Shown here: positions 1-57,084 of the stretch, one piece after another | Numbering within the stretch: the first letter of the stretch is position 1 | Layout: every line of letters starts with the position of its first letter | NCBI GenBank assembly: GCA_002269645.1 | Contig: NIVC01000598.1 | Coordinates: 470,286 to 534,285, forward strand | DNA: 64,000 nucleotides | DNA from: Macrostomum lignano | Taxonomy: Eukaryota | Reading direction: 5' to 3' | Translations under genes and position numbers: made by a program | The notes under the pieces: model-generated | Databases searched by the model: none | Told to the model about the DNA's origin: nothing | Seen by the model: only the letters and a program-made list of their open reading frames with translations

Positions 1-29171
<29,171 letters not shown>

Positions 29172-30705: not shown

Positions 30706-31050
<345 letters not shown>

Positions 31051-37329: not shown

Positions 37330-37506
37330 AGAGAGGGAAGAGAGGATGAGAGAGGGTGTGAGAGGGTGAGAGAGGATGAGAGAGGGTGAGAGAGGGTAAG
37401 AGAGGGTGAGAGAGGGTGAGAGAGGGTGAGAGAGGGTGAGAGAGGGTGAGAGAGGGTGAGAGAGGGTGAGAGAGGGTGAGAGATGGAGAGAGAGAGAGAG
37501 AGAGAG

Positions 37507-37547
<41 letters not shown>
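37330..37547. repeat. (GGTGAGAGAG)n followed by (GA)n
   Basis: Direct reading. Confidence 0.95.
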
Positions 37548-37550
<3 letters not shown>

Positions 37551-37620
37551 CGCCTCCAATCTCGGGCACTGACACGGTAGAAAGTCAGAAAGGACTGAAA
37601 AAAGTCAATTTAAATTGAGT

Positions 37621-37657
37621 AGCCGATATTTCGAAATTAAATTTCTTCGTCAGGGCT
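37621..37657 (-). ncRNA. minimal type I hammerhead ribozyme (PLE type)
   Basis: Minus strand reads AGCC CUGACGA A GAAAU UUA AUUUC GAAA UAU C^GGCU. It has both core boxes, a 5-bp stem II, a palindromic AUAU stem III, a UC cleavage site and a 4-bp stem I (AGCC/GGCU). Confidence 0.88.
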
Positions 37658-38489: not shown

Positions 38490-39045
38490 GGATGAGAGAG
38501 GGTGAGAGAGGGTAAGAGAGGGTGAGAGAGGGTGAGAGAGGGTGAGAGAGGGTGAGAGAGGGTGAGAGAGGGTGAGAGAGGGTGAGAGAGGGTGAGAGAG
38601 GGTAAGAGAGGGTGAGAGAGGGTAAGAGAGGGTGAGAGAGGGTAAGAGAGGGTGAGAGAGGGTGAGAGAGGGTGAGAGAGGGTGAGAGAGGGTGAGAGAG
38701 GGTGAGAGAGGGTGAGAGAGGGTGAGAGAGGGTGAGAGAGGGTAAGAGAGGGTTAGAGAGGGTTAGAGAGGGTGAGAGAGGGGGAGAGAGGGTGAGAGAG
38801 GGTGAGAGAGGGTGAGAGAGGGTGAGAGAGGGTGAGAGAGGGTGAAAGAGGGTGAGAGAGGGTGAGAGAGGGTAAGAGAGGGTGAGAGAGGGTGAGAGAG
38901 GGTGAGAGAGGGTGAGAGAGGGTGAGAGAGGGTGAAAGAGGGTGAAAGAGGGTGAGAGAGGGTGAGAGAGGGTGAAAGAGGGTGAGAGAGGGTGAAAGAG
39001 GGTGAAAGAGGGTGAAAGAGGGTGAGAGAGGTTGAGAGAGGGTGA
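38490..39045. repeat. 10-bp array (GGTGAGAGAG)n inside the PLE relic
   Basis: Direct reading; same unit as 37330-37480. Confidence 0.97.
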
Positions 39046-39711
39046 GTGATGAGTGAGGGTAAGAAGCCCAGCTCCATCAGCACCTCTTATTTGATACGTG
39101 CGCAGGAAACGTCCGCTGTAGCCCTGGTGTCGCACCAGATTTTCTGGTGCAAGCTTCATCGAAGTCAGCCATCCGAGAGCGACGTCAAGGCGTATCTGAG
39201 AAGCTGGGACTTCACCACCCCTCGGAAAGTAGACTTGGGATGGAATGAGCTGCGATTGATGAGGGCTCGGACTGTCGGTGGGCTTGAAGAAAGTTATAAG
39301 TGGCACAGCAGAGAAAAATGTCCTTGGGGCGGCCGTAGCCCCCAGCACCCCCAGTTCACGGCATTCCCGAAGTCCATTCCCAGGTCAGGTGACTCCCAGT
39401 CTACGGCGCGGTGGAATGCAAAACTGGGCCGCACATTCGATGCCCTCGGTTGTCTCCCCCCCGCAAAATCAAGTTTTCCCAAACCGCATCGGTTTTCACC
39501 GGGATCTCCTGTAGCAGGGAACTGGCAGTCCATTGATCAGCCAGTGCCAGCGCTAGCCAAACTGCTGTGTGCCGGATGTACTAATACAGGGTGCGCTGAC
39601 TGACTGGTTGGCTGGATAAAAGATGCGATTTTTTGGGGAGATCCCGATGTAAAATTGACTTCTGCCAGCTGTTCTGAGGGGGAGAAATGTTGGTGAGGCT
39701 GGTTAAGCCGG

Positions 39712-40671
39712 TGGCGCCAAGGGAGACTGAATGGCGCCAAGGGAGACTGTATGGCGCCAAGGGAGACTGTATGGCGCCAAGGGAGACTGTATGGCGCAAA
39801 GGGAGACTGTATGGCGCCAAGGGAGGCCATGTGGCGCCAAGGGAGACTGTATGGCGCCAAGGGAGACTGTATGGCGCCAAGGGAGACTGTATGGCGCCAA
39901 GGGAGACTGTATGGCGCAAAGGGAGACTGTATGGCGCCAAGGGAGACTGTATGGCGCAAAGGGAGACTGTATGGCGCCAAGGGAGGCTAAGAGTGGGTTC
40001 AAGATACCTATGACTTACCTGAGTGCAAGTCACTCTGGAGAATATCGCTGGGCAGCGACAGAACTGAGCGTTAATTGACTGCAGAGTTGATTTAGCGGCC
40101 GCGAAGAACCCGAAAAATATTCCCGGAAATTGAAACTAAATGAACTTTTCCCTGGCTGGAGTAAGGGACTTCTTTGACTTAAAACAATCGAGGTTTACTT
40201 CCGCACGAGCTATCGGGTTCCAGATTCGTGTTTCGTAATGGAATTTTTAGACGCCCCTGATCACTGTCTTGGTGCAGTTGGAATAGCCTTATTGGCATTG
40301 GCTGAGGCGACTAAAAGCTTAAGTTCAGGGAAATGGCAGGCGAGCTTTTGCATTTTGGCGTTCCAAAGTTTGCATTTCCTCGGGGGGTTTGCAAGCAAAA
40401 TAGGGATTTCTAGATTCTGCTCAATCACTGCGCTGACCAGACCACTCAGTTCAGGGGGTCTGAAAAGTTTCTTCTAGAAATTATAAAAATAGAGTGACTG
40501 AAAGGCTGCTCAAATGCAGCTAACTGGTCCGCAGTCTTCTCGGGTATGGCGCCATACAGTCTCCCTTGGCGCCATACAGTCTCCCTTGGCGCCATACAGC
40601 CTCCTTTGGCGCCATACAGTCTCCCTTGGCGCCACCCGGTCCCCCTTGGCGCCACCCGTCTCCCTTGGCAC
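39712..40671. repeat. two arrays of one 20-bp unit (ATGGCGCCAAGGGAGACTGT) in inverted orientation, 39712-39985 and 40546-40671
   Basis: The right unit GGCGCCATACAGTCTCCCTT is the reverse complement of a rotation of the left unit. Confidence 0.95.
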
Positions 40672-40696
40672 CAAACAGACTAGATATCTACAGTCC

Positions 40697-41129
<433 letters not shown>

Positions 41130-42141
41130 CAAAACGTACATAAGTGTTCTCAGAATTGATCTGAGAGTGGGACAGCGGAGCCAAATCACTTGAATCGGGT
41201 GAACGAGTGGCTGCGTGTGTGCCGTGGCCGCGCATGCGCCTGCTTGAAATGTGATTGAAAGCCAGCCAAAGCCAAGTCTCTCTCTCTCTCCTCGGCTCCA
41301 ACTGTCGGCCGGTCATTAGAATCGATTTAGCAAGAGTAGAGGAGGGCATGGCGAGGTTTGAGTTCTCAAATCCTCAGTTGGGGGGGGGCGCGTCTCAAGG
41401 ATCTGGGGAATTCTCTCGCCAGGCCTTCCAAGTGCAGTGGGTTTGGAAACGAGGAAGGTAAAGGTGCAATCGCACTAGGAACTAAATATTCACCTCTGCA
41501 GTGATAATGATCACCAATAGTATTAAACAGCTGGCGATTGGAAAGCCAGGGCTCCTGTACACCATGCGTTGCGGTCAAAGGCAACGGCCTTCTTATTTAC
41601 CTCCTCGCTAGTCAAGGACTCGTCTTATTACAAGTAAAATTTAGATCACAAAAAAGATATAACAGCTTTTATTCTGTTAGTAGTACTGTTAGTAGGCTAG
41701 TAGCGATTCTATGATATTTTTATTTACCTATTCTTAAAAAATAATGAATCAGCATGTACTATTGCAAAGTTGCGCGCACTAATTCAAAAAGTACAAAGCA
41801 ATCAGTAATGCAAGTCAATTTAGTATTGACGTACCACAGGCAGAGACTCAAGCTTAAACATTTGGCTGACGGCAGCTGCAGCTCATTATTATGCATGAAA
41901 TGTTACAAGAACAGTCAGCATCCAGGCTTGCATTGCCTGCATACTTTGTTGCAGGCGTGCCACAGGAAAGCAAAGAAGGAGACCTGTTTAATTTAGAAGA
42001 ATTCTGGCTTGCTTGGCTTAAACTCAAACTCAAACTCAGTACAGCTGTTAAGCACCCGCAAACGATGCAATAAATTACCGCCTCAGGTGGACTTAAGCGG
42101 GGGAGCGCTCTCTTTTTCTCTATTTCAGTTTGTTTCTCGAA

Positions 42142-42155
42142 GTTTCCATGGAAAC
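42142..42155. promoter_or_regulatory. RFX X-box-like palindrome GTTTCCATGGAAAC upstream of copy A
   Basis: Perfect 14-bp palindrome (extends to 18 bp) fitting GTHNYYATRRNAAC, at -167 from the ATG. Confidence 0.65.
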
Positions 42156-42308
42156 TTGAGGCAGCCCCAAGACAATAGACTTTCCTACTAAAGCAGAGTT
42201 TGACTGCATCGGGTCTGCGCCACTTCCCCAGTTTGTTGAGATTCTCAAGCTCACAGCCTCTCACTCAGTGCTGCCTTCTCAGTCCTACTTACTGGACGGC
42301 CTTCCAAA

Positions 42309-43611
42309 ATGTCCTTATCGAGCATTGCCGTCATCGTGGCCATCTGGAGCTCTCGAGCTGCCGGTGAGACCTTCGTCTTCGACAAGAGGCCGGACCTGTG
42401 CTTCGCGGAGGCGGCCCCGGCTGCTGGCGACCAGCGCAAAGTGCTCGGAGTTGTTGACTCTCGAGTGTGCGCGGTTGAGTGCGCGGTCAACACCAGTTTG
42501 TGCTCCGTCTACCAATACCTGCCTGGCAACAAATCCTGCGTCCTTGGCAACAGCTGCGACCTGCTGCTGAAGTGGCAGAGCACCGGCGGGCCGGCGTGCG
42601 ACACGCAGACGCTTCGAGATCGGGCAGCGTGCGGGACCACAGCATCATCTACTGTCTCGACTACAGCTACAACCCAAACAACAACCACTGCACAAACCGC
42701 ATTTCATGGTAAATTGAGCATGAGATCTTCCGATCTAAATGCCGGGTCATGGGTGCCATTAGCGAACACTGTATCAGATTATAGCAATACAACACATGGA
42801 ACTTCTTCCAGCTCCTCCGTCGGACTCGAGCAACCAAACTGGATCGGTGCAGACTTTCACTCCGCCGACCGACGGCTGCTATCGAATCTCGGCTTGGGGC
42901 GCCAGAGGCGGCAAGTCATCCGCTAACGCGAACGGCGGCAGAGGCGCATTCAAGAGCGCCAATTTCATGCTGACCACGTCGCAAACTCTCACGCTTGTTG
43001 TTGGCAAGCCGGGAAACAGCGGCAGCAGCGGCGGAGGAGGCGGAGGAGGCGGAGGAGGCGGAGGAGGCGGCAGCTTTGTGTACACAACCGGCGACAACAC
43101 GCTGCTGCTGGCGGCCGGTGGCGGAGGAGGCGGCGGCGCCGAGTCGTCCTCGTCGGTCGGCAGAAACGGAACAAGCAGCACCGGAGGCTCTTGCGGCACA
43201 TCAGACGAACAAGGCGGTGACGGAGACAGCAACGATAACTCTGGCGCGGGCGGAGCTGGCTGGAGCTCAGACGGAGCAGCTCGAGCCACTGGCAATGGCG
43301 GAGGCCACGGTGGAAGAGGCATCGGCGGCAGCTGGGCCGGCGGCAACGCGGGAACGGGCAGCAACGGCTTCGGCGGCTACGGCGGAGGCGGCGGAGGCGG
43401 CAACAACGATGGTGACAAGGGAGGCGGCGGTGGAGGCGGCGGCTTCTCTGGCGGTTGCGGAGGATCCGGCGACAGCGATGACGGCTACGGAGGCAGCGGC
43501 GGCAGCTACGCGAGCTCATCCGGCAAGCAGGCCGCGGGAACGACAGGCGGCAACGGTGAAGTCTTCGGCAAGGTGAGCATCGCTCAGGTGGACGGCTCTC
43601 TGTGCCATTAA
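42309..43611 (+). CDS. copy A: secreted PAN/apple-like + Thr stalk + ALK/LTK-type glycine-rich protein, 399 aa; exons 42309-42708 and 42812-43611
   Basis: Signal-peptide-like N-terminus and an 8-Cys domain with CAVEC...CSVYQY...CVL. A 103-nt phase-1 intron (G|GTAAAT...TTCCAG) joins the two ORFs into TFTPPTDGCYRISAWGARGG...GGRGA...LTLVVGKPG...GGGGSFVY...LLLAAGGGGG. Confidence 0.85.
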
Positions 43612-44294
43612 CATGAGCACTCAGTCATTAGTTTGCTACTGTTTATAAATACAGGAAAATAAGGGGCTTGTGAATTGGATCAACTATTTGAAGGAGCGTC
43701 ATTTGAATTAACGTTGGGTTGGAAGATGTTGAGTGACAAACCAGCAACTTTGCAATCGTACAATTAAGACTTCTTACTTTCTGAATATATTTTTGATTAA
43801 ATATTTTTTCTTCACAAAGCCAATTCATTACGCGTATCGATTGACTTTCTCTTTTGTACTGCTCAGTTCTGAATTATGATTTATGCAGCCATGACCATAT
43901 TAGCCGTAATCCACTGACCCATGGTAACAAGCTTGAGTGCTTTGTCACAAAAATAAAAATTTTGTTCTGGTACAATTTGATTTTTTTCGAATGTCTTTAT
44001 ATAAAAGTTTCACTACTTACAGTAGGGTGACGTGTATTAGCAACTGCAAACTGGTTTTGTTGAACTTAAATAAATGGGCGAGTCATTCTGATGCAGTGGT
44101 TTCTCTTTAAATTCTCTAGCAAAAGGCAGCGTTCACCTATTCGAGTATATTTTATAAAGCAGTCTTTCTCTAATAAACTGAAATACGTTAATACGAGCAA
44201 TTTACTCTCTATAGCAACGTTATGGCTCTGTGACTTCTTCACGCTTAAGTCAGGCTTTGGAAGGATCTAAAAGCTGTGCGATCAGTGCTAGGCA

Positions 44295-45720
44295 CATTGG
44301 AAGGGTACAGTGGAAGGTTACAGTGGGTTCGCAGAGTTGAAGGGCACAGTGGAAGGGTACAGTGGAATGTCACAGTGGAAGGGCACAGTGGAAGGGCACA
44401 GTGGAAGGGCACAGTGGAAGGGCACAGTGGAAGGGTACAGTGGAAGGGTACAGTGGAAGGGCACAGTGGAAGGGCACAGTGGAAGGGCACAGTGGAAGGG
44501 CACAGTGGAAGGGCACAGTGGAAGGGTACAGTGGAAGGGTACAGTGGAAGGGCACAGTGTGGAAGGGTACAGTGGAAGGGCACAGTGGAAGGGTACAGTG
44601 GAAGGGTACAGTGGAAGGGCACAGTGTGGAAGGGTACAGTGGAAGGGCACAGTGGAAGGGTACAGTGGAAGGGTACAGTGGAAGGGTACAGTGGAAGGGT
44701 ACAGTGGAAGGGTACAGTAGAAGGGTACAGTAGAAGGGTACAGTGGAATGTCACAGTGGAAGGGCACAGTGGAAGGGCACAGTGGAAGGGCACAGTGGAA
44801 GGGCACAGTGGAAGGGTACAGTGGAAGGGCACAGTGTGGAAGGCTACAGTGGAAGGGCACAGTGGAAGGGCACAGTGGAAGGGCACAGTGGAAGGGCACA
44901 GTGGAAGGGCACAGTGTGGAAGGGTACAGTGGAAGGGCACAGTGGAAGGGTACAGTGGAAGGGTACAGTGGAAGGGCACAGTGTGGAAGGGTACAGTGGA
45001 AGGGCACAGTGTGGAAGGGTACAGTGGAAGGGCACAGTGGAAGGGTACAGTGGAAGGGTACAGTGGAAGGGTACAGTGGAAGGGTACAGTGGAAGGGTAC
45101 AGTAGAAGGGTACAGTAGAAGGGTACAGTGGGTTCGCAGAGTTGAAGGGTACAGTGGAAGGGTACAGTGGAAGGGTACAGTGGAAGGGTACAGTGGAAGG
45201 GTACAGTGGAAGGGTACAGTGGAAGGGTACAGTGGAAGGGTACAGTGGAAGGGTACAGTGGAAGGGTACAGTAGAAGGGTACAGTGGGTTCGCAGAGTTG
45301 AACGACACAGTGGAAGGGTACAGTGGAAGGGTACAGTGGAAGGGCACAGTGTGGAAGGGTACAGTGGAAGGGCACAGTGGAAGGGTACAGTGGAAGGGTA
45401 CAGTGGAAGGGTACAGTAGAAGGGTACAGTGGGTTCGCAGAGTTGAACGACACAGTGGAAGGGTACAGTTGAAGGGCACAGTGGGTTCGCAGAGTTGAAC
45501 GACACAGTGGAAGGGTACAGTGGAAGGGCACAGTGTGGAAGGGTACAGTGGAAGGGCACAGTGGAAGGGTACAGTGGAAGGGCACAGTGGAAGGGTATAG
45601 TGGAAGGGTACAGTAGAAGGGTACAGTGGGTTCGCAGAGTTGAACGACACAGTGGAAGGGTACAGTTGAAGGGCACAGTGGGTTCGCAGAGTTGAAGGGC
45701 AGAGTTGAAGGGCACATTGA
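44295..45720. repeat. 13-bp satellite (CAGTGGAAGGG[C/T]A)n between copies A and B
   Basis: Direct reading. Confidence 0.97.
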
Positions 45721-46879
45721 GTAATTCATCTCCACTTGAGAGCCGCGCGTGTCTCCGCTGCAAATATCCCGGCAATTTCATGAACCTGCTGTACGAATCA
45801 CTGAACGACTTGCTTCCAGGCTTACCTGACGCCTTCTTCTTCTTGGCCGAGCTGCTCCATTGCGGCTAGCAGAGATTGTAGCCGACTTGGCTCTCCCTCG
45901 TCCCGCAGACTTTGTTGGATCGCCTGCTGTCTTGGCTGGCTCCTTGCTCATTGCGTCCGGTTAGAGTCGCTGCAACGCCACTGTTATGGCTGAGACGGAT
46001 CACTGGCTTATTGGTTCATGGCTGATAAACGCCAAAATGTGTTATCAAGCTCAACTTTAATTTTTTCTACGAGTGCTAGCATTTCATATGCGCATCGCAT
46101 CTTTCAGCTACAAGCCGATGAAAATAAATGGTAGCAGTCCGTGCTGGCGATTCAAGTCTGTGATCGAGCCAGAGCAAACATTATGTGGGAAAAAGCGCCC
46201 ATCAGCTGGGATGTTCTACAAGTGTTTTAGTTAAGGTTTCTAAGCGAAACTCCCATGCCAGCAGTATCATAGTTTGAGGGATTGGGGGCCAGTGGCAGCT
46301 GATTGACTACAGAACTCGAATGATCTTTCCTTTAGAAAAAACCTTAAAGAATAATCACTGCATCAGACTGACTCGCCCGTTTATTCCAGTTCAACAAAAC
46401 CAGTTCAGAAATACGTGTCACCCTACTGTAAGTAGCAAAACTCGGATAGCTTTTTACATGAAAACGTTCAGAGAAAGGATCAAGTCTTTCAAGAAAAAAA
46501 GTTTAATTTTTCAGACAAAGCACTCAAGCTTGTTAACATGGGTCAGTGGATTACGGCAAATATGGTCATGCCTGCATAAATCATAATTCACAACTGAACA
46601 GCACAAAACCAGCAGAGAAAGTCAAACAAAGCTTGGCTCGCTTTGTGAATAAACGAATTTTATATTCAATATTTAATTAGAAAGATCACCCTAGGTTGCA
46701 AGCAAAATATAATATAAATATTTAATCATAAATATTCAATCATATCATTTTGGATTAAATCATAAATATAATCAAAAATTAATAAAAAATGACGTTCCTT
46801 CAAATAGTTGATCCAATTCACAAGCCCCTTATTTTCCTGTATTTATAAACAGTAGCAAACTAATGACTGAGTGCTCATG

Positions 46880-47835
46880 TTAATGGCACAGAGAGCCGTC
46901 CACCTGAGCGATGCTCACCTTGCCGAAGACTTCACCGTTGCCGCCTGTCGTTCCCGCGGCCTGCTTGCCGGATGAGCTCGCGTAGCTGCCGCCGCTGCCT
47001 CCGTAGCCGTCATCGCTGTCGCCGGATCCTCCACAACCGCCAGAGAAGCCGCCGCCTCCACCGCCGCCTCCCTTGTCACCATCGTTGTTGCCGCCTCCTC
47101 CGCCTCCGCCAAAGCCGCCGAAGCCGTTGCTGCCCGTTCCCGCGTTGCCGCCGGCCCAGCTGCCGCCGATGCCTCTTCCACCGTGGCCTCCGCCATTGCC
47201 AGTGGCTCGAGCTGCTCCGTCTGAGCTCCAGCCAGCTCCGCCCGCGCCAGAGTTATCGTTGCTGTCTCCGTCACCGCCTTGTCCGTCGGATGTGCCGCAA
47301 GAGCCTCCGGTGCTGCTTGTTCCGTCCTTACCGACCGACGAGGAAGACTCGGCGCCGCCGCCTCCTCCGCCACCGGCCGCCAGCAGCAGCGTGTTGGGGC
47401 CGGTTGTGTACACAAAGCTGCCGCCTCCTCCGCCTCCTCCGCCTCCTCCGCCTCCTCCGCCGCTGCTGCCGCTGTTTCCCGGCTTGCCAACAACAAGCGT
47501 GAGAGTTTGCGACGTGGTCAGCATGAAATTGGCGCTCTTGAATGCGCCTCTGCCGCCGTTCGCGTTAGCGGATGACTTGCCGCATCTGGCGCCCCAAGCC
47601 GAGATTCGATAGCAGCCGTCGGTCGGCGGAGTGAAAGTCTGCACCGATCCAGTTTGGTTGCTCGAGTCCGACGGAGGAGCTGGAGGGAGTTCCGTATGTT
47701 GTATTGCTATAGTCTGATACAGTGCTCGCTAATGGCACCCATGACCCGGCATTTAGATCGGAAGATCTCATGCTCAATTTACCATGAAATGCGGTTTGTG
47801 CAGTGGTTGCTGTTTGGGTTGTAGTTGTAGCTGTC
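46880..47835 (-). pseudogene. copy B: inverted, 5'-truncated paralogue (exon 2 46880-47679 intact, intron 47680-47782, only ~50 nt of exon 1)
   Basis: Reverse-strand match to copy A; homology stops near 47835, so it lacks the ATG, signal peptide, PAN-like domain and X-box; Gly-to-Cys change in WGARGG. Confidence 0.75.
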
Positions 47836-48077
47836 GACTGAATCCTTCGGGAACTTATGTCAATAAAACTCTCTTATTTGAAGTAAATTCTTATAGAATG
47901 AACCACGTTAATGCGCAGACTCTCTATAGCTTTCAGCGATCACAAAAGTTGTAGCTGTGTGACTTCATCATGCAATGGGTCGGTATGTGACAGTGTCAGG
48001 CTTTTGGGCTCCTCGCAACTGCCGGAATGCAGATTCCAGAAGTTCGCCATCTGCACATGGGAATGCACGGTTGAGAA

Positions 48078-48895
48078 GGATCTCGAGCATGCAGTCTCCC
48101 ATCTGTCAGATCTCGAGCATGCAGTCTCCTATCTGTCGGATCTCGAGCATGCAGTCTCCCATCTGTCGGATCTCGAGCATGCAGTCTCCTATCTGTCGGA
48201 TCTCGAGCATGTGAGCATGCAGTCTCCTATCTGTCGGATCTCGAGCATGCAGTCTCCCATCTGTCGGATCTCGAGCATGCAGTCTCCCATCTGTCAGATC
48301 TCGAGCATGTGAGCATGCAGTCTCCTATCTGTCGGATCTCGAGCATGCAGTCTCCCATCTGTCAGATCTCGAGCATGCAGTCTCCTATCTGTCGGATCTC
48401 GAGCATGTGAGCATGCAGTCTCCTATCTGTCGGATCTCGAGCATGTGAGCATGCAGTCTCCCATCTGTCGGATCTCGAGCATGTGAGCATGCAGTCTCCT
48501 ATCTGTCGGATCTCGAGCATGCAGTCTCCTATCTGTCGGATCTCGAGCATGTGAGCATGCAGTCTCCTATCTGTCGGATCTCGAGCATGTGAGCATGCAG
48601 TCTCCCATCTGTCGGATCTCGAGCATGCAGTCTCCCATCTGTCGGATCTCGAACATGTGAGCATGCAGTCTCCCATCTGTCGGATCTCGAACATGTGAGC
48701 ATGTAGTCTCCCATCTGTCGGATCTCGAACATGTGAGCATGCAGTCTCCCATCTGTCGGATCTCGAACATGTGAGCATGCAGTCTCCCATCTGTCGGATC
48801 TCGAACATGTGAGCATGCAGTCTCCCATCTGTCGGATCTCGAACATGTGAGCATGCAGTCTCCCATCTGTCGGATCTCGAGCATGCAGTCTTCCA
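48078..48895. repeat. 30/38-bp minisatellite (GCATGCAGTCTCCCATCTGTCGGATCTCGA[GCATGTGA])
   Basis: Direct reading. Confidence 0.96.
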
Positions 48896-50015
48896 TCTGT
48901 CGGTCTGAGAGCCCAAGCGCAACATATGCGGCACGAGACCGAAGAGGTAGCAACATCAAGGCCGCCTGTCTGCCACCGTCAGCACCGTATATGCACTATA
49001 GAGCATTTTCTGCGTTAGAGTCAAAGAAAGCGCTACCCTGTTAAATAGTTAAAGACATGTAAAGTCATGTTGAAGACATCTACATGTAAATGCAGCTCAG
49101 TTCAAAGCTACTTCGGCGCTGCCATCACAGGAGCCCAATATTTGCGTAATCACACGACTCGTTCACAAGCTGCTGTATCTTTGTACATCCTATGTGTGAT
49201 TTCATGGCAGCGTGAACGAGCTATTGAGTCACATCACTGACGTAACAAGCAACAACAAAAGTGAAGAATATTACAGAGGCGAGGGAGATATTTTTAAGTG
49301 GTGTCCAATCGAAATTCTCTGTGCCAGTATCATCAGTGCTATTGGCAGCTCATTGACTACCAAAATGGTCTCTGACAAGGTCAATTCACTAATAATTTTG
49401 TTTTTCTGGCTTTTAGAGGGCTTTTATATAACTTCCCGACGGATTCAGTCGATTCTTTGCCTGAAATCTCTCTTGCCTTAAATGCTTTGTCGCCCGTAGT
49501 GCCTTCAGTATGGTTCTGTCAGCAAGCCTAAAACTAGAAAGAAAATATGCACCACCCCCCAACACTGATGGCGCGCCAGGCATACCATGGGTCTCATTTA
49601 ACATCAGCTTAAAATGGAAGAGCTGAAATATCGACCGCTAATGGATAGCCTTCCCTCAAAAGAGAAGTTCTTTGGGTAACGACGCTAAGTGCCTTCACGA
49701 ATAGAGATTACTATAGAAAGTTTGCCAAGTCGTTTGTTGCAGAGCACCCATCCATTCTTAAGACTCGTCTCTCAGTAGACCGTGATAAGCCCCCCATTGG
49801 TAGAAATTTTTGTGGCACAGACTTTAACAAAAACTGAGTCTTTTTGCGTTTTCTAACATTTACAGCTTTTATCTCCCCATCAGGAGTTATCCCCTCCCAT
49901 TATCGCCTCCCATTTCAAGCTACGCTCGTACGCTACTGTGGCCTCTCGTTTCCCACTCTCGCTCCCCTCCTCTCTCACTCTCTCACATTTTCTCTCTGTC
50001 AGTTTGTTTCTCAAA

Positions 50016-50029
50016 GTTTCCATGGAAAC
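50016..50029. promoter_or_regulatory. RFX X-box-like palindrome GTTTCCATGGAAAC upstream of copy C
   Basis: Same motif, at -168 from the ATG. Confidence 0.65.
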
Positions 50030-50183
50030 ATTAGGCAGGCCCCAAGACAATAGACTTTCCTACTAAAGCAGAGTTTGACTGCATCGGGTCTGCGCTACTT
50101 CCCCAGTTTGTTGAGATTCTCAAGCTCACAGCCTCTCACTCAGTGCTGCCTTCTCATTCCTACTTACTGGACGGCCTTCCAAA

Positions 50184-51696
50184 ATGTCCTTATCGAGCAT
50201 TGCCGTCATCGTGGCCATCTGGAGCTCTCGAGCTGCCGGTGAGACCTTCGTCTTCGACAAGAGGCCGGACCTGTGCTTCGCGGAGGCGGCCCCGGCTGCT
50301 GGCGACCAGCGCAAAGTGCTCGGAGTTGTTGACTCTCGAGTGTGCGCGGTTGAGTGCGCGGTCAACACCAGTTTGTGCTCCGTCTACCAATACCTGCCTG
50401 GCAACAAATCCTGCGTCCTTGGCAACAGCTGCGACCTGCTGCTGAAGTGGCAGAGCACCGGCGGGCCGGCGTGCGACACGCAGACGCTTCGAGATCGGGC
50501 AGCGTGCGCGTCCACGAGCGACACTGCAGCCACAACTGCAGCCTCGACTGGAGCAGTTGCTACTACAACTACAACTACAACACCAACTACAACTACAACT
50601 ACAACATCAACTACAACTACAACACCAACTACAACTACAACACCAACTACAACTACAACACCAACTACAACTACAACACCAACTACAACTACAACATCAA
50701 CTACAACTACAACACCAACTACAACTACAACACCAACTACAACTACAACTACGACTACAACTACAACCCAAACAACAACCACTGCACAAACCGCATTTCA
50801 TGGTAAGTTGAGCATGAGATCTTCCGATCTAAATGCCGGGTCATGGGTGCCATTAGCGAGCACTGTATCAGACTATAGCAATACAACATACGGAACTCCC
50901 TCCAGCTCCTCCGTCGGACTCGAGCAACCAAACTGGATCGGTGCAGACTTTCACTCCGCCGACCGACGGCTGCTATCGAATCTCGGCTTGGGGCGCCAGA
51001 GGCGGCAAGTCATCCGCTAACGCGAACGGCGGCAGAGGCGCATTCAAGAGCGCCAATTTCATGCTGACCACGTCGCAAGCTCTCACGCTTGTTGTTGGCA
51101 AGCCGGGAAACAGCGGCAGCAGCGGCGGAGGAGGCGGAGGAGGCGGAGGAGGCGGCAGCTTTGTGTACACAACCGGCCCCAACACGCTGCTGCTGGCGGC
51201 CGGTGGCGGAGGAGGCGGCGGCGCCGAGTCTTCCTCGTCGGTCGGTAAGGACGGAACAAGCAGCACCGGAGGCTCTTGCGACACATCCGACGGACAAGGC
51301 GGTGACGGAGACAGCAACGATAACTCTGGCGCGGGCGGAGCTGGCTGGAGCTCAGACGGAGCAGCTCGAGCCACTGGCAATGGCGGAGGCCACGGTGGAA
51401 GAGGCATCGGCGGCAGCTGGGCCGGCGGCAACGCGGGAACCGGCAGCAACGGCTTCGGCGGCTTTGGCGGAGGCGGAGGAGGCGGCAACAACGATGGTGA
51501 CAATGGAGGCGGCGGCGGAGGAGGCGGCTTCTCTGGCGGTTGTGGAGGATCCGGCGACAGCGATGACGGCTACGGAGGCAGCGGCGGCAGCTACGCGAGC
51601 TCATCCGGCAAGCAGGCCGCGGGAACGACAGGCGGCAACGGTGAAGTCTTCGGCAAGGTGAGCATCGCTCAGGTGGACGGCTCTCTGTGCAGTTAA
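50184..51696 (+). CDS. copy C: secreted PAN-like + 98-aa Thr/Pro stalk + Gly-rich protein, 469 aa; exons 50184-50802 and 50906-51696
   Basis: Same structure; 103-nt phase-1 intron G|GTAAGT...CTCCAG; open frame. Confidence 0.85.
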
Positions 51697-51884
51697 CATG
51701 AGCGCGCACTGATACTCGTCATTTTTTATTGTTACAAACACTGGAAAACAATCAGCTTGCATACTTGCGCGACGGCTCTGCGCAAGAGGTGCACGGTGAT
51801 GGGCGGCACTTCTCGAAAAAGTTCCCCTGCCCTATCCCGCGACCAAAGCGTGGTTAGTTACATCAGCCTAATTAAATATCTTAC

Positions 51885-52107
51885 TACACTACACCTGTCC
51901 ACGGCTGTTCAGTGCAAGGACTGGGGGGTCGCCACACACAGCCTCAATTACCCCAGCTAATGCTGGCACCCATTTTACAGCTGGGTGAACTGAAGCAATG
52001 CAGAGTTAAGTGTCTTGCTCAAAGACACGAATTGTTCCGAGTGGGTCAGGAATCGAACCCCCGACCTTTTAGTTGTGAGTCCAACGCTCCAACCTATAAC
52101 CTAAGGC
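51885..52107 (-). mobile_element. tRNA-derived SINE with a conserved-type central domain
   Basis: Minus strand has a tRNA-like head with B box GGTTCGATTCC, followed by GTGTCTTTGAGCAAGACACTT...TTCACCCAGCTGTAAAATGGGTGCC, a body pattern typical of ancient metazoan SINEs. Left boundary is approximate. Confidence 0.7.
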
Positions 52108-52224
52108 TACAACCCAACCTACCTGTCCTTTATTACGTACAGCACATTAGCGCTTATCCATTGAGAATTCCAAAGTAGTCATGGTCCAAAAATTGAGTAT
52201 TGCGTATTAAATAAAATTCTGACA

Positions 52225-54542
52225 ACAACAAACAACAAAATACGCTGTCAGGATGGCAAAAGTCAGCATCACAGGGCGCGCTTCATGGCTTGGGCGCGAA
52301 CAAAGGCCGCACCACAGGCAGTGTCCGGGGCGCCGGCGTCAGCCAGCAGACAGTCGACATAACGCCGAGTTCGCGCTTGTCCTCGCCGGTAGGGTGCCTG
52401 CAGCGTGAGCAGCAGCACCTCCTGCACCGGCTGTGGGCAGTACGACTCGGCGCGGATGAGATGGCCTGCGAGCTGGAGTCGCCGACGGCGCAGTAGATCG
52501 CTTGGACGTGGCAGGCCAGCGCGGCGATAGAGTGCCGCGTTGGTGACTCGCTCGACGCCGATGTTGAAGGCGACGCGCAGCAGGCCAGCGTGCGCCGCAT
52601 CGACTTGCTGTTCGAGTGAGTCCGTCAGCGTCCAGGTCTCGGCGTTGTACAGCAGGACGGTCTCGATTACCGCCTGGAACAGCGCCGCCCTCTGGCGGTC
52701 CGGTAGGGCCTCGGACTGCAGGACTGCCCTCACAGAACGAAAGGCAGCCCAGGCAAGCCCGCGGCGGCGTCGCAGGTCCTCGCGAGCGTCTGGAACCAGA
52801 CCGCCGAGGTAGACGAACTGCTGACATCGCGGGAGTTCGGTCGCCTGCCCGTCAGTGCCTCGGCAGAATATTACAGTCTCGATGTCGTCCGGCACGCAGA
52901 GCACAACGGTCTTCTGCGTGTTGACCACCAGGCCGACGCTCGCCGCAACGGCAACTAGCGTGTCCAGCTGCCGTTGGGCGCCCTCGACGGTCGAGGACCG
53001 CAAGGCGAGGTCGTCGGCGTAGCCAAGCACGCTGAGCCGTTTCTCCGGTTGACGTCGACCCACGCGTCGCCGCAGCAGAAAACCGTCGTCGTCGGTAGGA
53101 AGAGCAATCCGCAGCACCCAGTCAAGCACCAGGACGAACAGGAACGGCGCCAGCGTATCTCCCTGAAGCACTCCGGAGGATGTCTCAAAGGAGTCCGATA
53201 GGCCATCCGGTGTTGTCACAGCAGCTGTCGTATCACGGTACATCGCCATGATGGCGGAGATCAGCTGCTTAGGCACGTTGTACGCGTGGAGCACCATTGG
53301 AAGCACGGCTCTGACAACCGAGTCGAATGCCTTCTTGAAATCGATAAAGATTAGAATCAGGATCGACTGGCGAATCCGCGCCTCCTCGATGACTCGGCGA
53401 AGAGCCAGGATCTGCGCCACTGTGCCGCGATGGGGCCGGAACCCGTTCTGCTCTGGGCGCAGGTACGGATCCAGCACGGGCTGCAACCGCGAAAGCAGCA
53501 TCCGGTTGAACAGCTTCGCTGCACAGGACTGAAGGCAGATGCCTCGATGGTCTTCAAGCCTAGTGGTGCCCGGCTTCTTTGGAACAGCGACGATGTGCGC
53601 CGATGTGTGCCGTGGTCCATTCGTTGGGCGCCGCCTCACCGAAGAGCACGCGGTTCATCACTCTAGCGACCTCAGCGGCCACACAGGGGATGCGCAGCGC
53701 CTCGATGGGCACCTCGTCCGGACCCAGCGCTTTCCCGCCCGGTGACTGCTGGGCGAGCTTGACAACGTCGGCTGCGTTGACTGGGGCTACGCTGAAACTC
53801 TTCTCTGCCGGCAACGGCGTCTCCGGCGGCAGCGTCAGACTGTCTGGCAGCGGGGGTGGCGGCGCGTTAACGATGGCGGCGAAGAACTCGCGCAGCTCGT
53901 TCCTGCGCTCGTCCGGAGTGTCACCAGCCAGGTTCAGCGGATTGCGCCGCTTTCGCCCCGTCAGAGCGTTGATGGCGGACCAGGCCACGCGCTCTCTGGC
54001 ATCGGGCCCAGCGGCAGAGACAGCCAGAATGGCGTCATCGACAGCCGCTTGTTGGCGCTGCAGGTAGACAGCCGCCAGAGCTGCCTCTGCCTCGCGGGTT
54101 GGTCGCCTGCTCAAGCGGAGCCTCTCCAGATCTTTCCTCGCTGCCTGAATCGCAGGGTCGTCCTGCCAGACCGGCTGCCCACGTTGAGCCGGTTGCATCA
54201 TCGGGACTACTTGCTCCGCGGTGGTTCTGACTGCAGCGCACACTTCCGCATACTCGGCACTTCCACGCTTGTCGCCCAGCGCGGTGTTAAAGGCGCTAGC
54301 AAAGCGACGCTGCGTATCGGTGGCTCTGAGCGCGCGGTAGTAGCACCGCGGTGGCCGCTTCGGCGGACGGTAGAGCGGATCGCAAAGGTTGAGGTCGCAG
54401 ATGAGGAGCCGGTGATCGGACCGCAGAGCCAGCGGCGTGATGGTGCGGCAGTTGACGGCGCGACGACGCTCACGGAAACGCACGAGCACGTGGTCGAGCT
54501 GTGCTTGTCTCCGGGTTGCGTACCTGCCACGCGCAGGAACGC
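52225..54542 (-). mobile_element. 5'-truncated RTE-clade non-LTR retrotransposon (APE C-terminus and RT), one frameshift
   Basis: SDH motif of APE; RT motifs EQNGFRPHRG, IDFKKAFDSV, GVLQGDTLAPFLF, YADDL, YLGG; short 3' UTR with TTG-rich tail; 10-bp TSD AATTCTGACA at 52215-52224 and 54543-54552. Confidence 0.93.
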
Positions 54543-55033
54543 AATTCTGACAGCTTGCTTTATATAGCTTCATCTTACCACTTCTAGTAGGCTAGTTGTA
54601 AAAATCCTCCAAGAAATGTACAAAGGCGACAAAAAAAGTAGAATCCGTGAATAGTAACCACGTGCGATGGCCGCATAAACGAGCTCTTAACATGGAGCTG
54701 GAAGTATTAAAATCACTTCTCCATAGTTGATAAGGAGCACTGATTAAAAAATTCGCTATTTAACGCAATAATTCTTTGAAATACGTGCGATGGTCAAAAT
54801 GTGCGCTTGTACCCCAAACTCGGTACTTTAGCGGCATCGATCAACTTATCCTCATGAGTAGAGATTTCTAAAGAGAACCATTTTTCCACGTCGTTTTTGC
54901 GGAGGACCCAACCCATTCCCACGACTGGTCTTTATTTTCTCCCCTCTCGCTCTACGTCCCCACCTTTCCCCGCTCTCCCTCCCCTCCTTTCTCGCTCTCT
55001 CACATGTTTCCCTCTGTCAGTTTGTTTCTCAAA

Positions 55034-55047
55034 GTTTCAATGGAAAC
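55034..55047. promoter_or_regulatory. X-box-like variant GTTTCAATGGAAAC upstream of copy D
   Basis: One mismatch to the A/C palindrome, same -168 position. Confidence 0.5.
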
Positions 55048-55201
55048 ATTAGCCAGGCCCCAAGACAATAGACTTTCCTACTAAAGCAGAGTTTGACTGC
55101 ATCGGGTCTGCGCTACTTCCCCAGTTTGTTGAGATTCTCAAGCTCACAGCCTCTCACTCAGTGCTGCCTTCTCATTCCTACTTACTGGACGGCCTTCCAA
55201 A

Positions 55202-56654
55202 ATGTCTTTATCGAGCATTGCCGTCATCGTGGCCATCTGGAGCTCTCGAGCTGCCGGTGAGACCTTCGTCTTCGACAAGAGGCCGGACCTGTGCTTCGCG
55301 GAGGCGGACCCGGCTGCTGGCCACCAGCGCAAAGTGCTCGGAGTTGTTGACTCTCGAGTGTGCGCGGTTGAGTGCGCGGTCAACACCAGCATGTGCTCCG
55401 TCTACCAATACCTGCCTGGCAACAAATCCTGCGTCCTTGGCAACAGCTGCGACCTGCTGCTGAAGTGGCAGAGCACTGGCGGGCCAGCGTGCGACACGCA
55501 GACGCTTCGAGATCGGGCAGCGTGCGGGACCACGAGCGACACTGCAGCCACAACTGCAGCCTCGACTGGAGCAGTTGCTACTACAACTACAACACCAACT
55601 ACAACTACAACTACAACTACTACTACAACTACAACACCAACTACAACTACAACTACAACTACAACACCAACTACAACTACAATACCAACTACAACTACAA
55701 CACCAACTACAACTACAACCCAAACAACAACCACTGCACAAACCGCATTTCATGGTAAGTTGAGCATGAGATCTTCCGATCTAAATGCCGGGTCATGGGT
55801 GCCATTAGCGAACACTGTATCAGATTATAGCAATACAACACATGGAACTTCTTCCAGCTCCTCCGTCGGACTCGAGCAACCAAACTGGATCGGTGCAGAC
55901 TTTCACTCCGCCGACCGACGGCTGCTATCAAATCTCGGCTTGGGGCGCCAGAGGCGGCAAGTCATCCGCTAACGCGAACGGCGGCAGAGGCGCATTCAAG
56001 AGCGCCAATTTCATGCTGACCACGTCGCAAACTCTCACGCTTGTTGTTGGCAAGCCGGGAAACAGCGGCAGCAGCGGTGGAGGAGGCGGAGGAGGAGGCA
56101 GCTTTGTGTACACAACCGGCCCCAACACGCTGCTGCTGGCGGCCGGTGGCGGAGGAGGCGGCGGCGCCGAGTCTTCCTCGTCGATCGGTAAGGACGGAAC
56201 AAGCAGCACCGGAGGCTCTTGCGGCACATCCGACGGACAAGGCGGTGACGGAGACAGCAACGATAACTCTGGCGCGGGCGGAGCTGGCTGGAGCTCAGAT
56301 GGAACAGCTCAAGCCACTGGCAATGGCGGAGGCCACGGTGGAAGAGGCATCGGCGGCAGCTGGGCCGGCGGCAACGCGGGAACGGGCAGCAACGGCTTCG
56401 GCGGCTACGGCGGAGGTGGCGGAGGCGGCAACAACGATGGAGTCCCTCCTGACGGCCGCGGTGGAGGCGGCGGTGGAGGAGGCGGCTTCTCTGGCGGTTG
56501 CGGAGGATCCGGCGACAGCGATGACGGCTACGGAGGCGGCGGTGGCAGCTACGCGAGCTCATCCGGCAAGCAGGCCACGGGAGCGACAGGCGGCAACGGT
56601 GAAGTCTTCGGCAAGGTGAACATCGCTCAGGTGGTCGCCTCTCTGTGCAGTTAA
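55202..56654 (+). CDS. copy D: secreted PAN-like + 76-aa Thr stalk + Gly-rich protein, 449 aa; exons 55202-55754 and 55858-56654
   Basis: Same structure and intron; open frame; unique VPPDGR insert. Confidence 0.85.
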
Positions 56655-57084
56655 CATGAGCAGTCAGTCTTTTCTCATCGACATTATGCAGGCCAGATTA
56701 TACTTACTGTACTTACTTTTTAAAGCTATTTAAACTTATTTAAACATGCTTACTTTCTCTATCGCAGCTACAGTAGTGCAGTTTCTATTGAAGATTCCTT
56801 TAGATTGCATATTAATGCATACATGTACTGTAGCTATGAAGTAGTATGCTCAGTAAAAATTTTTCTGTTCCTAATTGAACAAATATTGCCTCGTACAAGG
56901 AACTCCCGAATTTTTAAAGTTTTTTATCTCTGTCGTATTTATTTGTAATTAATTTTCTTCGCTTTTAAGCCTTAAATCTATACAACATATACAATAAGTT
57001 TAGATTGAAATAATAAAACAACTCTATTTGACACAGCTCCTTAAGTTACGTCATTTCTGGCTATTTAGTTATTGTGAACTTTGT

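What the first reader, a model, noticed from the sequence alone, without database searches (positions are those of the whole stretch)
42100..56700. Tandem family of secreted 'ALK/LTK ectodomain without a receptor' proteins: PAN-like head, Thr stalk, glycine-rich domain
Seen: three intact two-exon genes and one truncated copy, each with a signal-like N-terminus, an 8-Cys module, a Thr-rich stalk and a C-terminal Gly-rich domain ending at the stop, with no TM segment or kinase. Known: the pattern TFT..G.Y.I.AWGA.GG..GGRGA..L.LVVG..G..GGGGSFV..LL.AAGGGGG is typical of the ALK/LTK glycine-rich (TNF-like plus polyglycine-II) domain, and C-x3-C-x6-C-x2-Y-x7-C-x-L resembles PAN/apple modules. Inference: a lineage-specific amplified secreted family acting as a ligand decoy for ALK-type receptors, or as a structural surface, mucus or adhesive protein. 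I do not recognise this architecture from any named protein.
Basis: partly seen in the sequence, partly recalled or inferred. Interest (0 to 1): 0.85.

Follow-up and report, generated by a model that had tools for sequence, protein, structure and literature searches.

The report
Secreted flatworm proteins with ALK-like domain
A tandem cluster of three intact genes and one fragment, most likely from the flatworm Macrostomum lignano, encodes apparently secreted proteins that join a small cysteine-rich head and a threonine-rich stalk to the glycine-rich binding domain otherwise known from the ALK/LTK receptors, here with no receptor attached; the domain is real, but similar receptor-less versions already sit uncharacterised in coral and bacterial databases.

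Summary
Three intact two-exon genes encode proteins of 399, 469 and 449 aa, and there is one 5'-truncated inverted copy. Each has a 103-nt GT-AG phase-1 intron.

The C-terminal exon encodes a complete TNF-like/polyglycine domain (GRD):
- phmmer against PDB gives LTK at E=2e-10.
- The 21 best Foldseek hits are all ALK/LTK GRDs.
- It aligns end to end with coral PF12810 proteins.

No kinase motif occurs in any frame of the window. The only hydrophobic segment is the N-terminal signal-like one.

The PAN/apple assignment of the head is borderline: PAN_1 scores 22.3 bits against a cut-off of 21.4, and other tests were inconclusive.

An exhaustive search found a single other protein with this head. 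It is a Macrostomum lignano entry named 'Apple domain-containing protein', with the same head-plus-GRD layout. An old chimeric gene model maps collinearly onto the window, so the window is M. lignano or a very close relative.

The interpretation as an ALK ectodomain or ligand decoy is not supported. The nearest GRDs are receptor-less proteins of corals (some PAN+EGF+GRD) and bacteria, not ALK.

Best reading: lineage-specific, tandemly amplified, O-glycosylated extracellular binding proteins. This is a new variant of a known but uncharacterised kind, of moderate interest.

The parts
42108..42308 (+). G1 conserved 5' flank (putative promoter/5'UTR). It starts at a ...TTTCAG|TTTGTTTCTC junction and contains the palindrome TTTCCATGGAAAC.
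   Evidence: 94-96% identical to the flanks of G3 and G4. Homology between copies begins here.
42309..42708 (+). G1 exon 1: signal-like N-terminus, 8-Cys PAN-like head, short Ser/Thr linker.
   Evidence: ORF and splice donor G|GTAAAT. PAN_1 19.6 bits.
42709..42811 (+). G1 intron, 103 nt, GT..AG, phase 1.
   Evidence: Joining the exons restores one open frame of 399 aa. The intron is 93-99% identical among the four copies.
42812..43611 (+). G1 exon 2: complete TNF-like/polyglycine domain (GRD), ending at the stop codon.
   Evidence: phmmer against PDB gives LTK at E=2e-10. The Foldseek top 21 hits are all ALK/LTK GRDs. Full-length alignment with coral PF12810 proteins.
46880..47830 (-). G2: truncated inverted copy (end of stalk, intron 47680-47782, exon 2 of 265 aa). 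No head exon, and R->C in the AWGARGG motif. Probable pseudogene or fragment.
   Evidence: Inverted repeat I1, 42661-43704 vs 46787-47830, 98%. Translation. Unrelated sequence upstream.
49982..50183 (+). G3 conserved 5' flank.
50184..50802 (+). G3 exon 1: signal-like N-terminus, head, and long Thr stalk. The stalk is an 18-nt repeat, 12 copies, at 50562-50779, encoding (TTTTTP)n.
50906..51696 (+). G3 exon 2: GRD to the stop codon. The intron is 50803-50905, 103 nt.
54966..55201 (+). G4 conserved 5' flank.
   Evidence: blastn block 49949-51703 vs 54966-56661, 91.7%.
55202..55754 (+). G4 exon 1: signal-like N-terminus, head, and Thr stalk (6-nt repeat at 55580-55719).
   Evidence: The isolated head scores PAN_1 22.3 bits against a 21.4-bit cut-off.
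55858..56654 (+). G4 exon 2: GRD to the stop codon, with a 5-aa insertion (GVPPD) and a shorter first Gly run. The intron is 55755-55857, 103 nt.

Best explanation
This is a young tandem gene family, most probably of the free-living flatworm Macrostomum lignano. It encodes secreted extracellular proteins made of three parts.
- An N-terminal 8-cysteine head that looks like a PAN/apple module.
- A Thr/Pro-rich stalk of variable length (inferred to be mucin-type and O-glycosylated).
- A free-standing TNF-like/polyglycine-II domain (GRD) that forms the C-terminus.

Shown:
- the gene structures;
- the identity and fold class of the GRD;
- the absence of TM and kinase parts;
- amplification by tandem and inverted duplication, with mosaic identity that suggests gene conversion;
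- repeat slippage that changes the length of the stalk and of the first Gly run.

Inferred:
- The GRD acts as it does in its two studied settings. In ALK/LTK it captures ligand, and in phage tail fibres it forms the receptor-binding tip. In both it is a rigid binding module.
- The head is a second binding module.
- The protein is therefore a stalked, two-ended extracellular binder or cross-linker, for example a surface-coat, mucus, adhesion or microbe-recognition component.
- It belongs to the receptor-less GRD protein class also found in corals and bacteria, and it is not part of ALK signalling.
For: **Gene models.**
- Three copies have intact 399-469-aa reading frames only after removal of a conserved 103-nt GT-AG phase-1 intron.
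- An in-frame stop lies 24 codons upstream of each ATG.

**GRD.**
- LTK at E=2e-10 and ALK at E about 1e-5 to 6e-4 by phmmer against PDB.
- Gap-poor alignment across the whole domain with 39 homologues, with 44 invariant columns.
- The AF2 model has pLDDT 84-96 in the beta-sandwich strands.
- Its 21 best Foldseek hits are all ALK/LTK GRDs, at E 1e-7 to 6e-5; the top 19 (human ALK/LTK) cover about 285-314 aligned columns, while the two C. elegans ALK chains align over about 123.

**Secreted, no receptor.**
- The only hydrophobic stretch is the N-terminal 24 residues.
- No HRDLAARN or DFG motif occurs in six frames of 64 kb.
- G1 is followed 3.2 kb downstream by the convergent copy G2. G3 is followed by a LINE and then by G4.

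**Long-term maintenance.**
- The divergent M. lignano protein P0137 is 38% identical over 326 aa. It has the same head-plus-GRD order, all 8 head Cys, and the C-terminal 'LC' ending.

**Receptor-less GRD class.**
- Coral PAN(+EGF)+GRD proteins end at the GRD.
- In Porites the whole GRD is one terminal exon behind a phase-1 intron, as here.
- Other relatives carry PEP-CTERM, Por-secretion or PKD domains, and none carries a kinase domain.

**Binding role by analogy.**
- The phage Pam3 fibre tip is a TNF-like plus glycine-rich domain, noted as similar to the C. elegans ALK GRD and proposed to recognise the host receptor (PMC9608196).
Against: - No transcript, protein or expression evidence was available. 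Splicing, secretion and glycosylation are all inferred.
- The signal-like N-terminus is weak: its h-region is 8 residues and it has no basic n-region. It could not be scored with SignalP.
- pN/pS among copies is 0.6-0.9. That is compatible with relaxed constraint in very young duplicates, so some copies may be decaying.
- The PAN identity of the head is unproven.
- No binding partner is known for any receptor-less GRD protein.
- The polyglycine part of the model has low confidence, pLDDT 33-50.
Confidence: 0.55

Rival explanations
1. Soluble decoy or modulator of ALK-type signalling. The free GRD would sequester the worm's ALK ligand (Jeb/HEN-1- or ALKAL-like), or heterodimerise with an ALK receptor.
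For: The domain is homologous in sequence and fold to the ligand-binding GRD of ALK/LTK. The proteins appear to be secreted and lack a kinase.
Against: - Similarity to ALK/LTK (22-43 bits, 21-28% identity) is lower than to receptor-less GRDs of corals and bacteria (53-90 bits).
- No ALK-specific flanking modules were detected.
- The same receptor-less class occurs in bacteria, which have no ALK.
- The presence of ALK and its ligands in Macrostomum was not established; literature look-ups were uninformative.
Confidence: 0.07
2. Pattern-recognition or antimicrobial surface protein. The GRD tip would bind microbial surfaces, as phage fibre tips do, and paralogue differences would diversify specificity.
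For: - GRD-type tips bind bacterial receptors in phage fibres (PMC9608196; weak Foldseek hits to Pam3 and Bxb1 tail proteins at E about 0.04).
- Many amino-acid differences among paralogues fall in the stretches between Gly runs, and pN/pS is high at 0.6-0.9.
- The family is tandemly amplified.
Against: - The substitution counts are small, and neutral drift after recent duplication explains them equally well.
- No immune-type expression or binding data exist.
- The phage hits are not significant.
Confidence: 0.15
3. Reproductive or structural secretion, such as a seminal-fluid, eggshell or adhesive-gland component. The Gly-rich domain and mucin stalk would serve as material rather than as specific binders.
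For: - Composition is 21-26% Gly, and the stalks are Thr-rich.
- Rapid copy-number and repeat-length change is typical of secreted reproductive and adhesive proteins (general knowledge).
- Automatic names for the coral relatives are 'loricrin-like' and 'glycine-rich cell wall structural protein-like'.
Against: - The Gly-rich part is a defined, conserved globular fold with 44 invariant columns, not a low-complexity material domain.
- Those database names are composition artefacts.
- The literature search for Macrostomum glycine-rich secreted proteins found nothing relevant.
Confidence: 0.15
4. A cluster of recently duplicated, non-functional or decaying copies in a repeat-rich region.
For: - One copy is clearly truncated.
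- pN/pS is close to 1.
- The locus is embedded in minisatellites and next to a LINE.
- An earlier annotation produced only a nonsense chimeric model here.
Against: - Three copies keep full open frames of 399-469 aa, the splice sites, all 12 Cys and the invariant GRD residues, despite length changes that are all in frame.
- A paralogue at 38% identity keeps the architecture.
Confidence: 0.08

Closest known systems
ALK / LTK receptor tyrosine kinases: the extracellular TNF-like + glycine-rich ('TG'/GRD) ligand-binding domain (PDB 7nx0, 7lrz, 7n00, 7lir)
   Same: - Homologous GRD by sequence (LTK E=2e-10).
- Same predicted fold: the top 21 Foldseek hits, TM about 0.5 on the target.
- Same order of motifs (FT..G.Y.I.A.GA.GG ... 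GGGGSFV ... LL.AAGGGG ... final beta-strand).
   Different: - No TM segment, no kinase, and no detected MAM, LDLa or membrane-proximal EGF-like module.
- Only 21-28% identity.
- The whole GRD lies in one terminal exon.
- N-terminal partners are a PAN-like head and a mucin-like stalk.
Predicted, uncharacterised scleractinian coral proteins with PAN + (EGF) + PF12810 and no kinase. Examples: Porites harrisoni KAM7432210.1 (P0021), Pocillopora verrucosa XP_058960210.1 (P0028), Porites lutea (P0063).
   Same: - N-terminal Cys-rich PAN-type module, with the GRD as the C-terminal end of the protein.
- 34-40% identity over the local BLASTP alignments, which cover about half of the 399-aa query; 38-48% over aligned columns in the multiple alignment, which spans the whole GRD.
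- The GRD is encoded by a single terminal exon behind a phase-1 intron.
- Multi-copy families.
   Different: - Coral heads are clear PAN_1 matches (27-32 bits). They are not detectably related to the flatworm head by profile comparison.
- Corals have a fibrinogen/COLFI-like piece and EGF domains instead of a Thr stalk.
- Coral GRDs carry a ~25-aa insertion (SVEVKGGQSTN..SVEDNAGT) that is absent here.
Macrostomum lignano A0A1I8IMG2, 'Apple domain-containing protein' (P0137)
   Same: - Same head (all 8 Cys, 46-51% identity) followed by a GRD.
- Same C-terminal ...LC ending.
- 38% identity over 326 aa.
   Different: - No Thr-rich stalk; it has a short linker.
- The head has insertions.
- It lies at a different locus and is a fragmentary, partly chimeric gene model.
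- Pfam finds neither domain in it at E<=0.1.
Phage tail-fibre tips with a TNF-like + glycine-rich domain (cyanophage Pam3 gp24; polyglycine adhesin gp38 of phage S16)
   Same: A stalk-mounted distal polyglycine-II lattice used for receptor binding. The authors note its structural similarity to the C. elegans ALK GRD (PMC9608196).
   Different: - Trimeric fibre proteins, with no significant match here (Foldseek E about 0.04).
- No PAN-like head and no mucin stalk.

Membership tests
ALK/LTK-type glycine-rich domain superfamily (Pfam PF12810 ALK_LTK_GRD) | Sequence match to the family profile at or above the curated threshold | tested here: not met
   17.2 bits for G1 against a 24.5-bit cut-off, and no hit listed for G4. 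Coral homologues that align end to end with the window proteins do pass, at 34.3 and 30.7 bits.
ALK/LTK-type glycine-rich domain superfamily (Pfam PF12810 ALK_LTK_GRD) | Significant pairwise or profile homology to solved GRDs, and the conserved motif series across the whole domain | tested here: met
   LTK 7nx0 at E=2e-10 and seven ALK constructs at E 3e-5 to 6e-4. There are 44 invariant columns in a 40-sequence alignment spanning residues about 141-390.
ALK/LTK-type glycine-rich domain superfamily (Pfam PF12810 ALK_LTK_GRD) | TNF-like beta-sandwich carrying a polyglycine-II lattice (fold) | tested here: met
   The AF2 model's top 21 Foldseek PDB hits are all ALK/LTK GRDs, at probability 1.00. 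Caveat: the Gly-rich lattice itself is modelled at low confidence (pLDDT 33-50).
ALK/LTK receptor tyrosine kinases | Single-pass TM segment and a cytoplasmic tyrosine-kinase domain downstream of the GRD | tested here: not met
   The stop codon follows the last GRD strand directly. No hydrophobic segment lies beyond residue 24. No HRD[LIVM]xxxN or DFG motif occurs in six frames of the window. Splicing to exons outside the window cannot be excluded without RNA data.
ALK/LTK receptor tyrosine kinases | Membrane-proximal EGF-like domain after the GRD and, in ALK, MAM and LDLa modules before it | tested here: not met
   Pfam finds none of them at E<=1.
PAN/apple domain (Pfam PF00024 PAN_1; PROSITE Apple) | Profile match at threshold over the domain | tested here: inconclusive
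   - 22.3 bits for the isolated G4 head against a 21.4-bit cut-off, but 19.6-19.7 bits in the full proteins.
- Only profile positions 14-51 of 76 are matched.
- The homologue P0137 is named 'Apple domain-containing protein' by UniRef, but has no Pfam hit.
PAN/apple domain (Pfam PF00024 PAN_1; PROSITE Apple) | Homology to bona fide PAN domains, or a PAN fold (helix packed on a beta-sheet, nested disulfides) | tested here: inconclusive
   - hhalign against the coral PAN heads aligns the CxxxC...C...C core in register, but at E=0.24.
- No PDB sequence hit.
- The AF2 model of the head has pLDDT 45, which is unusable.
Mucin-like O-glycosylated stalk | Tandem Thr/Ser/Pro-rich repeats in a secreted protein | tested here: met
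   (TTTTTP)n is encoded by an 18-nt repeat of 12 copies in G3 and by a 6-nt repeat in G4. Thr makes up 17-20% of those proteins.
Mucin-like O-glycosylated stalk | Actual O-glycosylation | not testable with these tools
   Needs biochemistry.
Secreted protein | Cleavable N-terminal signal peptide | not testable with these tools
   Only a hydropathy scan was possible. The top 19-residue window starts at residue 6 (Kyte-Doolittle 1.44), and AAG|E is a plausible cleavage site. No SignalP was available.

The most novel reading that the evidence does not exclude
The receptor-less GRD proteins of flatworms, corals and bacteria represent the ancestral, free-living form of the module that ALK/LTK later captured as its ligand-binding domain. 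In Macrostomum they would act as soluble, stalk-mounted recognition molecules. Their target would be either microbes or the same class of small ligands that activate ALK, which would make them natural ALK-ligand traps.
Probability: 0.12. Interest if true: 0.8.

Novelty: new variant of a known kind. Interest (0 to 1): 0.42.

Why it matters
Once its structure was solved in 2021, the ALK/LTK glycine-rich domain was treated as a peculiarity of two receptor kinases. This locus shows the same domain working without a receptor, in a bilaterian. It sits in a new combination (Cys-rich head, mucin stalk, GRD), is under active copy-number and repeat-length change, and appears to be limited to Macrostomum.

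Together with the coral and bacterial relatives, this points to a broad, unstudied class of secreted GRD proteins. That class could tell us what the fold binds in general, and where the ALK ligand-binding module came from.

M. lignano is a tractable model organism with established RNAi, in situ hybridisation and transgenesis, so the function is directly testable.

It also flags a mis-annotated locus: the old gene model here is a chimera of sense, antisense and repeat ORFs.

Tried and rejected
**Searches for the head.**
- Word-indexed homologue searches with the head plus the start of the GRD and with a 3-sequence profile found no head-bearing relatives. Only the exhaustive search did, with a single true hit. 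Its other four hits (P0135, P0136, P0138, P0139) are long repetitive proteins with no resemblance to the head outside short stretches, and were judged spurious.
- hhalign of the flatworm head against the coral PAN heads was not significant.
- A PDB profile search with the head gave nothing.
- The AF2 model of the head has pLDDT 45, so no fold search was run on it.

**Other checks.**
- Exact look-up of the three spliced proteins: absent from the 15-billion-protein collection.
- No contig is on record for P0137.
It was replaced by a six-frame kinase-motif scan of the whole window, which was negative.
- pN/pS among paralogues is 0.6-0.9, based on 10-17 synonymous differences. That is too few to separate relaxed from diversifying selection.

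**Literature.**
- Searches for a characterised receptor-less GRD protein, for Macrostomum glycine-rich proteins, and for ALK in flatworms gave nothing decisive.
- The only mentions were an uncharacterised PF12810 trio in the fungus Drechmeria (PMC4859500) and domain abbreviations in a sea-anemone proteome paper.

**Rejected.** The automatic names of the relatives ('loricrin-like', 'keratin', 'lysozyme-like', 'receptor protein-tyrosine kinase') are composition or domain-transfer artefacts.

Full report
**What is in the sequence**

The region 42.1-56.7 kb holds four copies of one unit. Reading the ORFs and the sequence shows the following for three copies on the + strand.
- An ATG-initiated ORF runs into a G|GTAAAT or G|GTAAGT donor.
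- Exactly 103 nt later, a pyrimidine-rich ...CCAG acceptor is followed by a second ORF in a different frame.
- Joining the two ORFs gives uninterrupted proteins of 399 aa (G1: 42309-42708 / 42812-43611), 469 aa (G3: 50184-50802 / 50906-51696) and 449 aa (G4: 55202-55754 / 55858-56654).
- The intron is phase 1 in all copies.
- An in-frame TGA lies 24 codons upstream of each ATG, with no intervening ATG.

The fourth copy (G2, minus strand, 46880-47830) starts inside the end of the stalk. It keeps the intron and a complete exon 2. It has unrelated sequence where the head should be, and an R->C change in the conserved AWGARGG motif. It is one arm of a 1,044-nt, 98% inverted repeat with the 3' part of G1. 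tblastn finds no further copy in the window.

The duplicated unit runs from about 200-235 nt upstream of the ATG to only 7-90 nt past the stop. Identity among copies is mosaic. For example, the intron is 99% identical between G1 and G4 and between G2 and G3, but 93-94% otherwise, while the exon-2 relationships differ. This suggests gene conversion.

Length differences are all in frame and come from repeats. An 18-nt unit (12 copies) or a 6-nt unit builds the Thr stalk. A GGN run makes the first glycine tract 14, 11 or 8 residues long.

The only slip is one residue in the Cys spacing.

**The C-terminal domain**

Pfam's ALK_LTK_GRD model scores only 17.2 bits, below its cut-off of 24.5, so the call needed independent support. 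Four results provide it.
- phmmer against all PDB chains returns LTK (7nx0) at E=2e-10, with a low-bias stretch over residues 139-209, and seven ALK constructs at E 3e-5 to 6e-4.
- A 40-sequence alignment with database relatives is nearly gap-free across the whole domain. It has 44 invariant columns and ends at the same final beta-strand.
- An AlphaFold model built on that alignment is confident in the TNF-like strands (pLDDT 84-96). It is poor in the glycine lattice.
- The model's 21 best Foldseek matches in the PDB are all ALK/LTK GRDs. They have probability 1.00 and E from 1e-7 to 6e-5, and the top 19 (human ALK/LTK) cover essentially the full target, the two C. elegans ALK chains about a third.

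The domain is a genuine, complete GRD.

**No receptor**

- The stop codon follows the last GRD strand.
- The only hydrophobic 19-residue window is at the N-terminus.
- Pfam finds no EGF, MAM or LDLa module.
- A six-frame scan of the whole 64 kb finds no tyrosine-kinase catalytic-loop or DFG motif.
- The gene order argues against downstream exons. G1 faces the convergent copy G2 across a 13-nt minisatellite. G3 is followed by a LINE reverse transcriptase (RVT_1, 101 bits) and then by G4.
- Splicing to exons beyond the window cannot be formally excluded without RNA data.

**The head**

The 8-Cys module gives a borderline PAN_1 match.
- The isolated G4 head scores 22.3 bits against a cut-off of 21.4.
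- In the full proteins the score is 19.6-19.7 bits.
- Only the central CxxxC...C...C part of the profile is covered.

Three further tests did not settle the matter.
- Profile-profile comparison with the clear PAN domains of the coral relatives aligns the same cysteines, but is not significant.
- No PDB sequence hit was found.
- The structure prediction on a three-sequence alignment is unusable, at pLDDT 45.

The one true relative of the head is named 'Apple domain-containing protein' by UniRef. I treat 'PAN-like' as plausible but unproven.

**Relatives and source organism**

The exhaustive phmmer search of 1.84 billion representatives with the head gave one genuine hit, P0137. This is UniRef100_A0A1I8IMG2 from Macrostomum lignano.
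- It is collinear with G1 (head, short linker, GRD), at 38% identity over 326 aa.
- It keeps all eight head cysteines and the C-terminal LC ending.

Separately, P0003 is a 520-aa UniParc-style entry from the first search. It is a chimeric gene model whose pieces map in order onto the minus strand of this window from 47.5 kb to 29.0 kb, at 91-100% identity. The pieces are the sense strand of G2 exon 2, the antisense of G1, and repeat ORFs. Its identifier is in the same numeric range as that of P0140, which clusters with the M. lignano protein. I infer that the window is M. lignano or a very close relative. The window's extreme minisatellite load fits this species, whose genome is known to be very repeat-rich (the genome property is from general knowledge). 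The exact spliced proteins are absent from the 15-billion-protein collection, so the locus appears never to have been modelled correctly there.

**The wider class**

The full-length search returned 140 relatives, of which the best 120 are listed.
- None of the 120 carries a kinase Pfam domain.
- The best scores (89-90 bits) go to about 300-aa receptor-less GRD proteins. One of them ends in a PEP-CTERM-like anchor tail.
- Others carry PEP-CTERM, Por-secretion or PKD domains, which are typical of bacterial surface proteins.
- The named hits are almost all scleractinian corals. There the architecture is PAN + a short fibrinogen/COLFI-like piece + 0-4 EGF domains + GRD, again ending at the GRD.
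- In Porites harrisoni the gene has three exons separated by phase-1 introns, and the whole GRD sits in the terminal exon. This is the same arrangement as in the window, with the intron about six residues further from the first conserved strand. That suggests a mobile phase-1 GRD exon, but it does not prove one.
- By bit score the window GRD is closer to these receptor-less proteins than to LTK (43 bits) or ALK (22-26 bits).

**Function**

Nothing in the literature that I could search characterises a receptor-less GRD protein. The two studied settings of the fold are ligand capture in ALK/LTK and the receptor-binding tip of phage fibres. The Pam3 fibre paper explicitly notes the similarity to the C. 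elegans ALK GRD (PMC9608196). In both settings the polyglycine lattice is a rigid scaffold for a binding surface.

I therefore commit to the following reading. These are secreted, probably heavily O-glycosylated, two-ended binding proteins. A Cys-rich head sits at one end of a variable mucin-like stalk and a GRD at the other. They act outside the cell as cross-linkers or recognition molecules in a surface coat, mucus, adhesion or microbe-binding role.

The ALK-decoy idea remains possible but is the less economical reading, for three reasons.
- Similarity to ALK is the lowest among the relatives.
- The class exists in organisms without ALK.
- No ALK-specific context is present.

The paralogue differences cluster between the glycine runs, and pN/pS is 0.6-0.9. 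The counts are too small to separate drift from diversification.

**Verdict**

- The domain identification is correct for the GRD and open for PAN.
- The 'ALK ectodomain / decoy' framing is not supported.
- The architecture is not unique, because corals have PAN+GRD without a kinase. However, the head-stalk-GRD combination is new, appears restricted to Macrostomum, and is uncharacterised.
- It is a new variant of a known, unstudied kind, and of moderate interest.

Noticed in passing
window 28992-47524 (- strand): The database protein P0003 (UPI0007A34941, 520 aa) is a chimeric gene model of this very locus. It strings together the sense strand of G2 exon 2, the antisense translation of G1, and ORFs inside repeats. 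It is an annotation artefact, but it ties the window to an annotated genome, probably M. lignano.
   Followed up: yes
window 52269-54573 (- strand): A LINE-type retroelement lies between G3 and G4. A 456-aa ORF carries RVT_1 (101 bits). It overlaps an upstream 337-aa ORF in another frame that has no Pfam hit.
   Followed up: partly
whole window, e.g. 14227-16952, 19757-21047, 35451-36658, 44294-45681, 62102-63743: Micro- and minisatellite density is extreme, with 67 TRF rows at score >=200. Examples are 2.7 kb of (TCTA)n, 1.2 kb of (GACT)n, and a 13-nt unit repeated 99 times at 100% identity. Many long 'ORFs' in the window are just translations of these arrays.
   Followed up: no
window 42115-42135, 49990-50010, 55008-55028 (approximate): Homology among the gene copies begins exactly at a pyrimidine-tract + CAG|TTTGTTTCTC junction about 190 nt upstream of the ATG. 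It is followed by the palindrome TTTCCATGGAAAC. This could be a cis- or trans-splice acceptor for a 5' leader, or a promoter element.
   Followed up: no
window 38083-39348 (- strand): A 421-aa ORF has non-repetitive ends (…HFTSGGHSLTDFVFTGIWTRDG…EAKFIEVLRTHVPHGANE…) interrupted by a 10-nt minisatellite. It has no Pfam hit and is incorporated into the chimeric model P0003. It may be a remnant of a repeated element.
   Followed up: partly
window 18751-19674, 8647-9111, 2947-3612 (all - strand): ORFs with long poly-Gln runs and non-repetitive flanks, with no Pfam hits. They could be exons of one or more real genes upstream of the cluster.
   Followed up: partly
L001 10001-13388 (Porites harrisoni JBDLLT020000386.1): The coral PAN+GRD gene has three exons, all separated by phase-1 introns, with the entire GRD in the last exon. 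This is compatible with exon shuffling of a GRD cassette.
   Followed up: partly
one search hit list (P0001, P0004, P0010, P0027, P0102, P0110): GRD-like domains occur with PEP-CTERM (PF07589), Por-secretion (PF18962) or PKD domains, or, in P0001 (no precomputed Pfam hit), with a PEP-CTERM-like C-terminal tail seen in the sequence. These are probably bacterial surface proteins. P0001 (90 bits) and P0004 (82 bits) score above all named animal relatives (53-63 bits).
   Followed up: no
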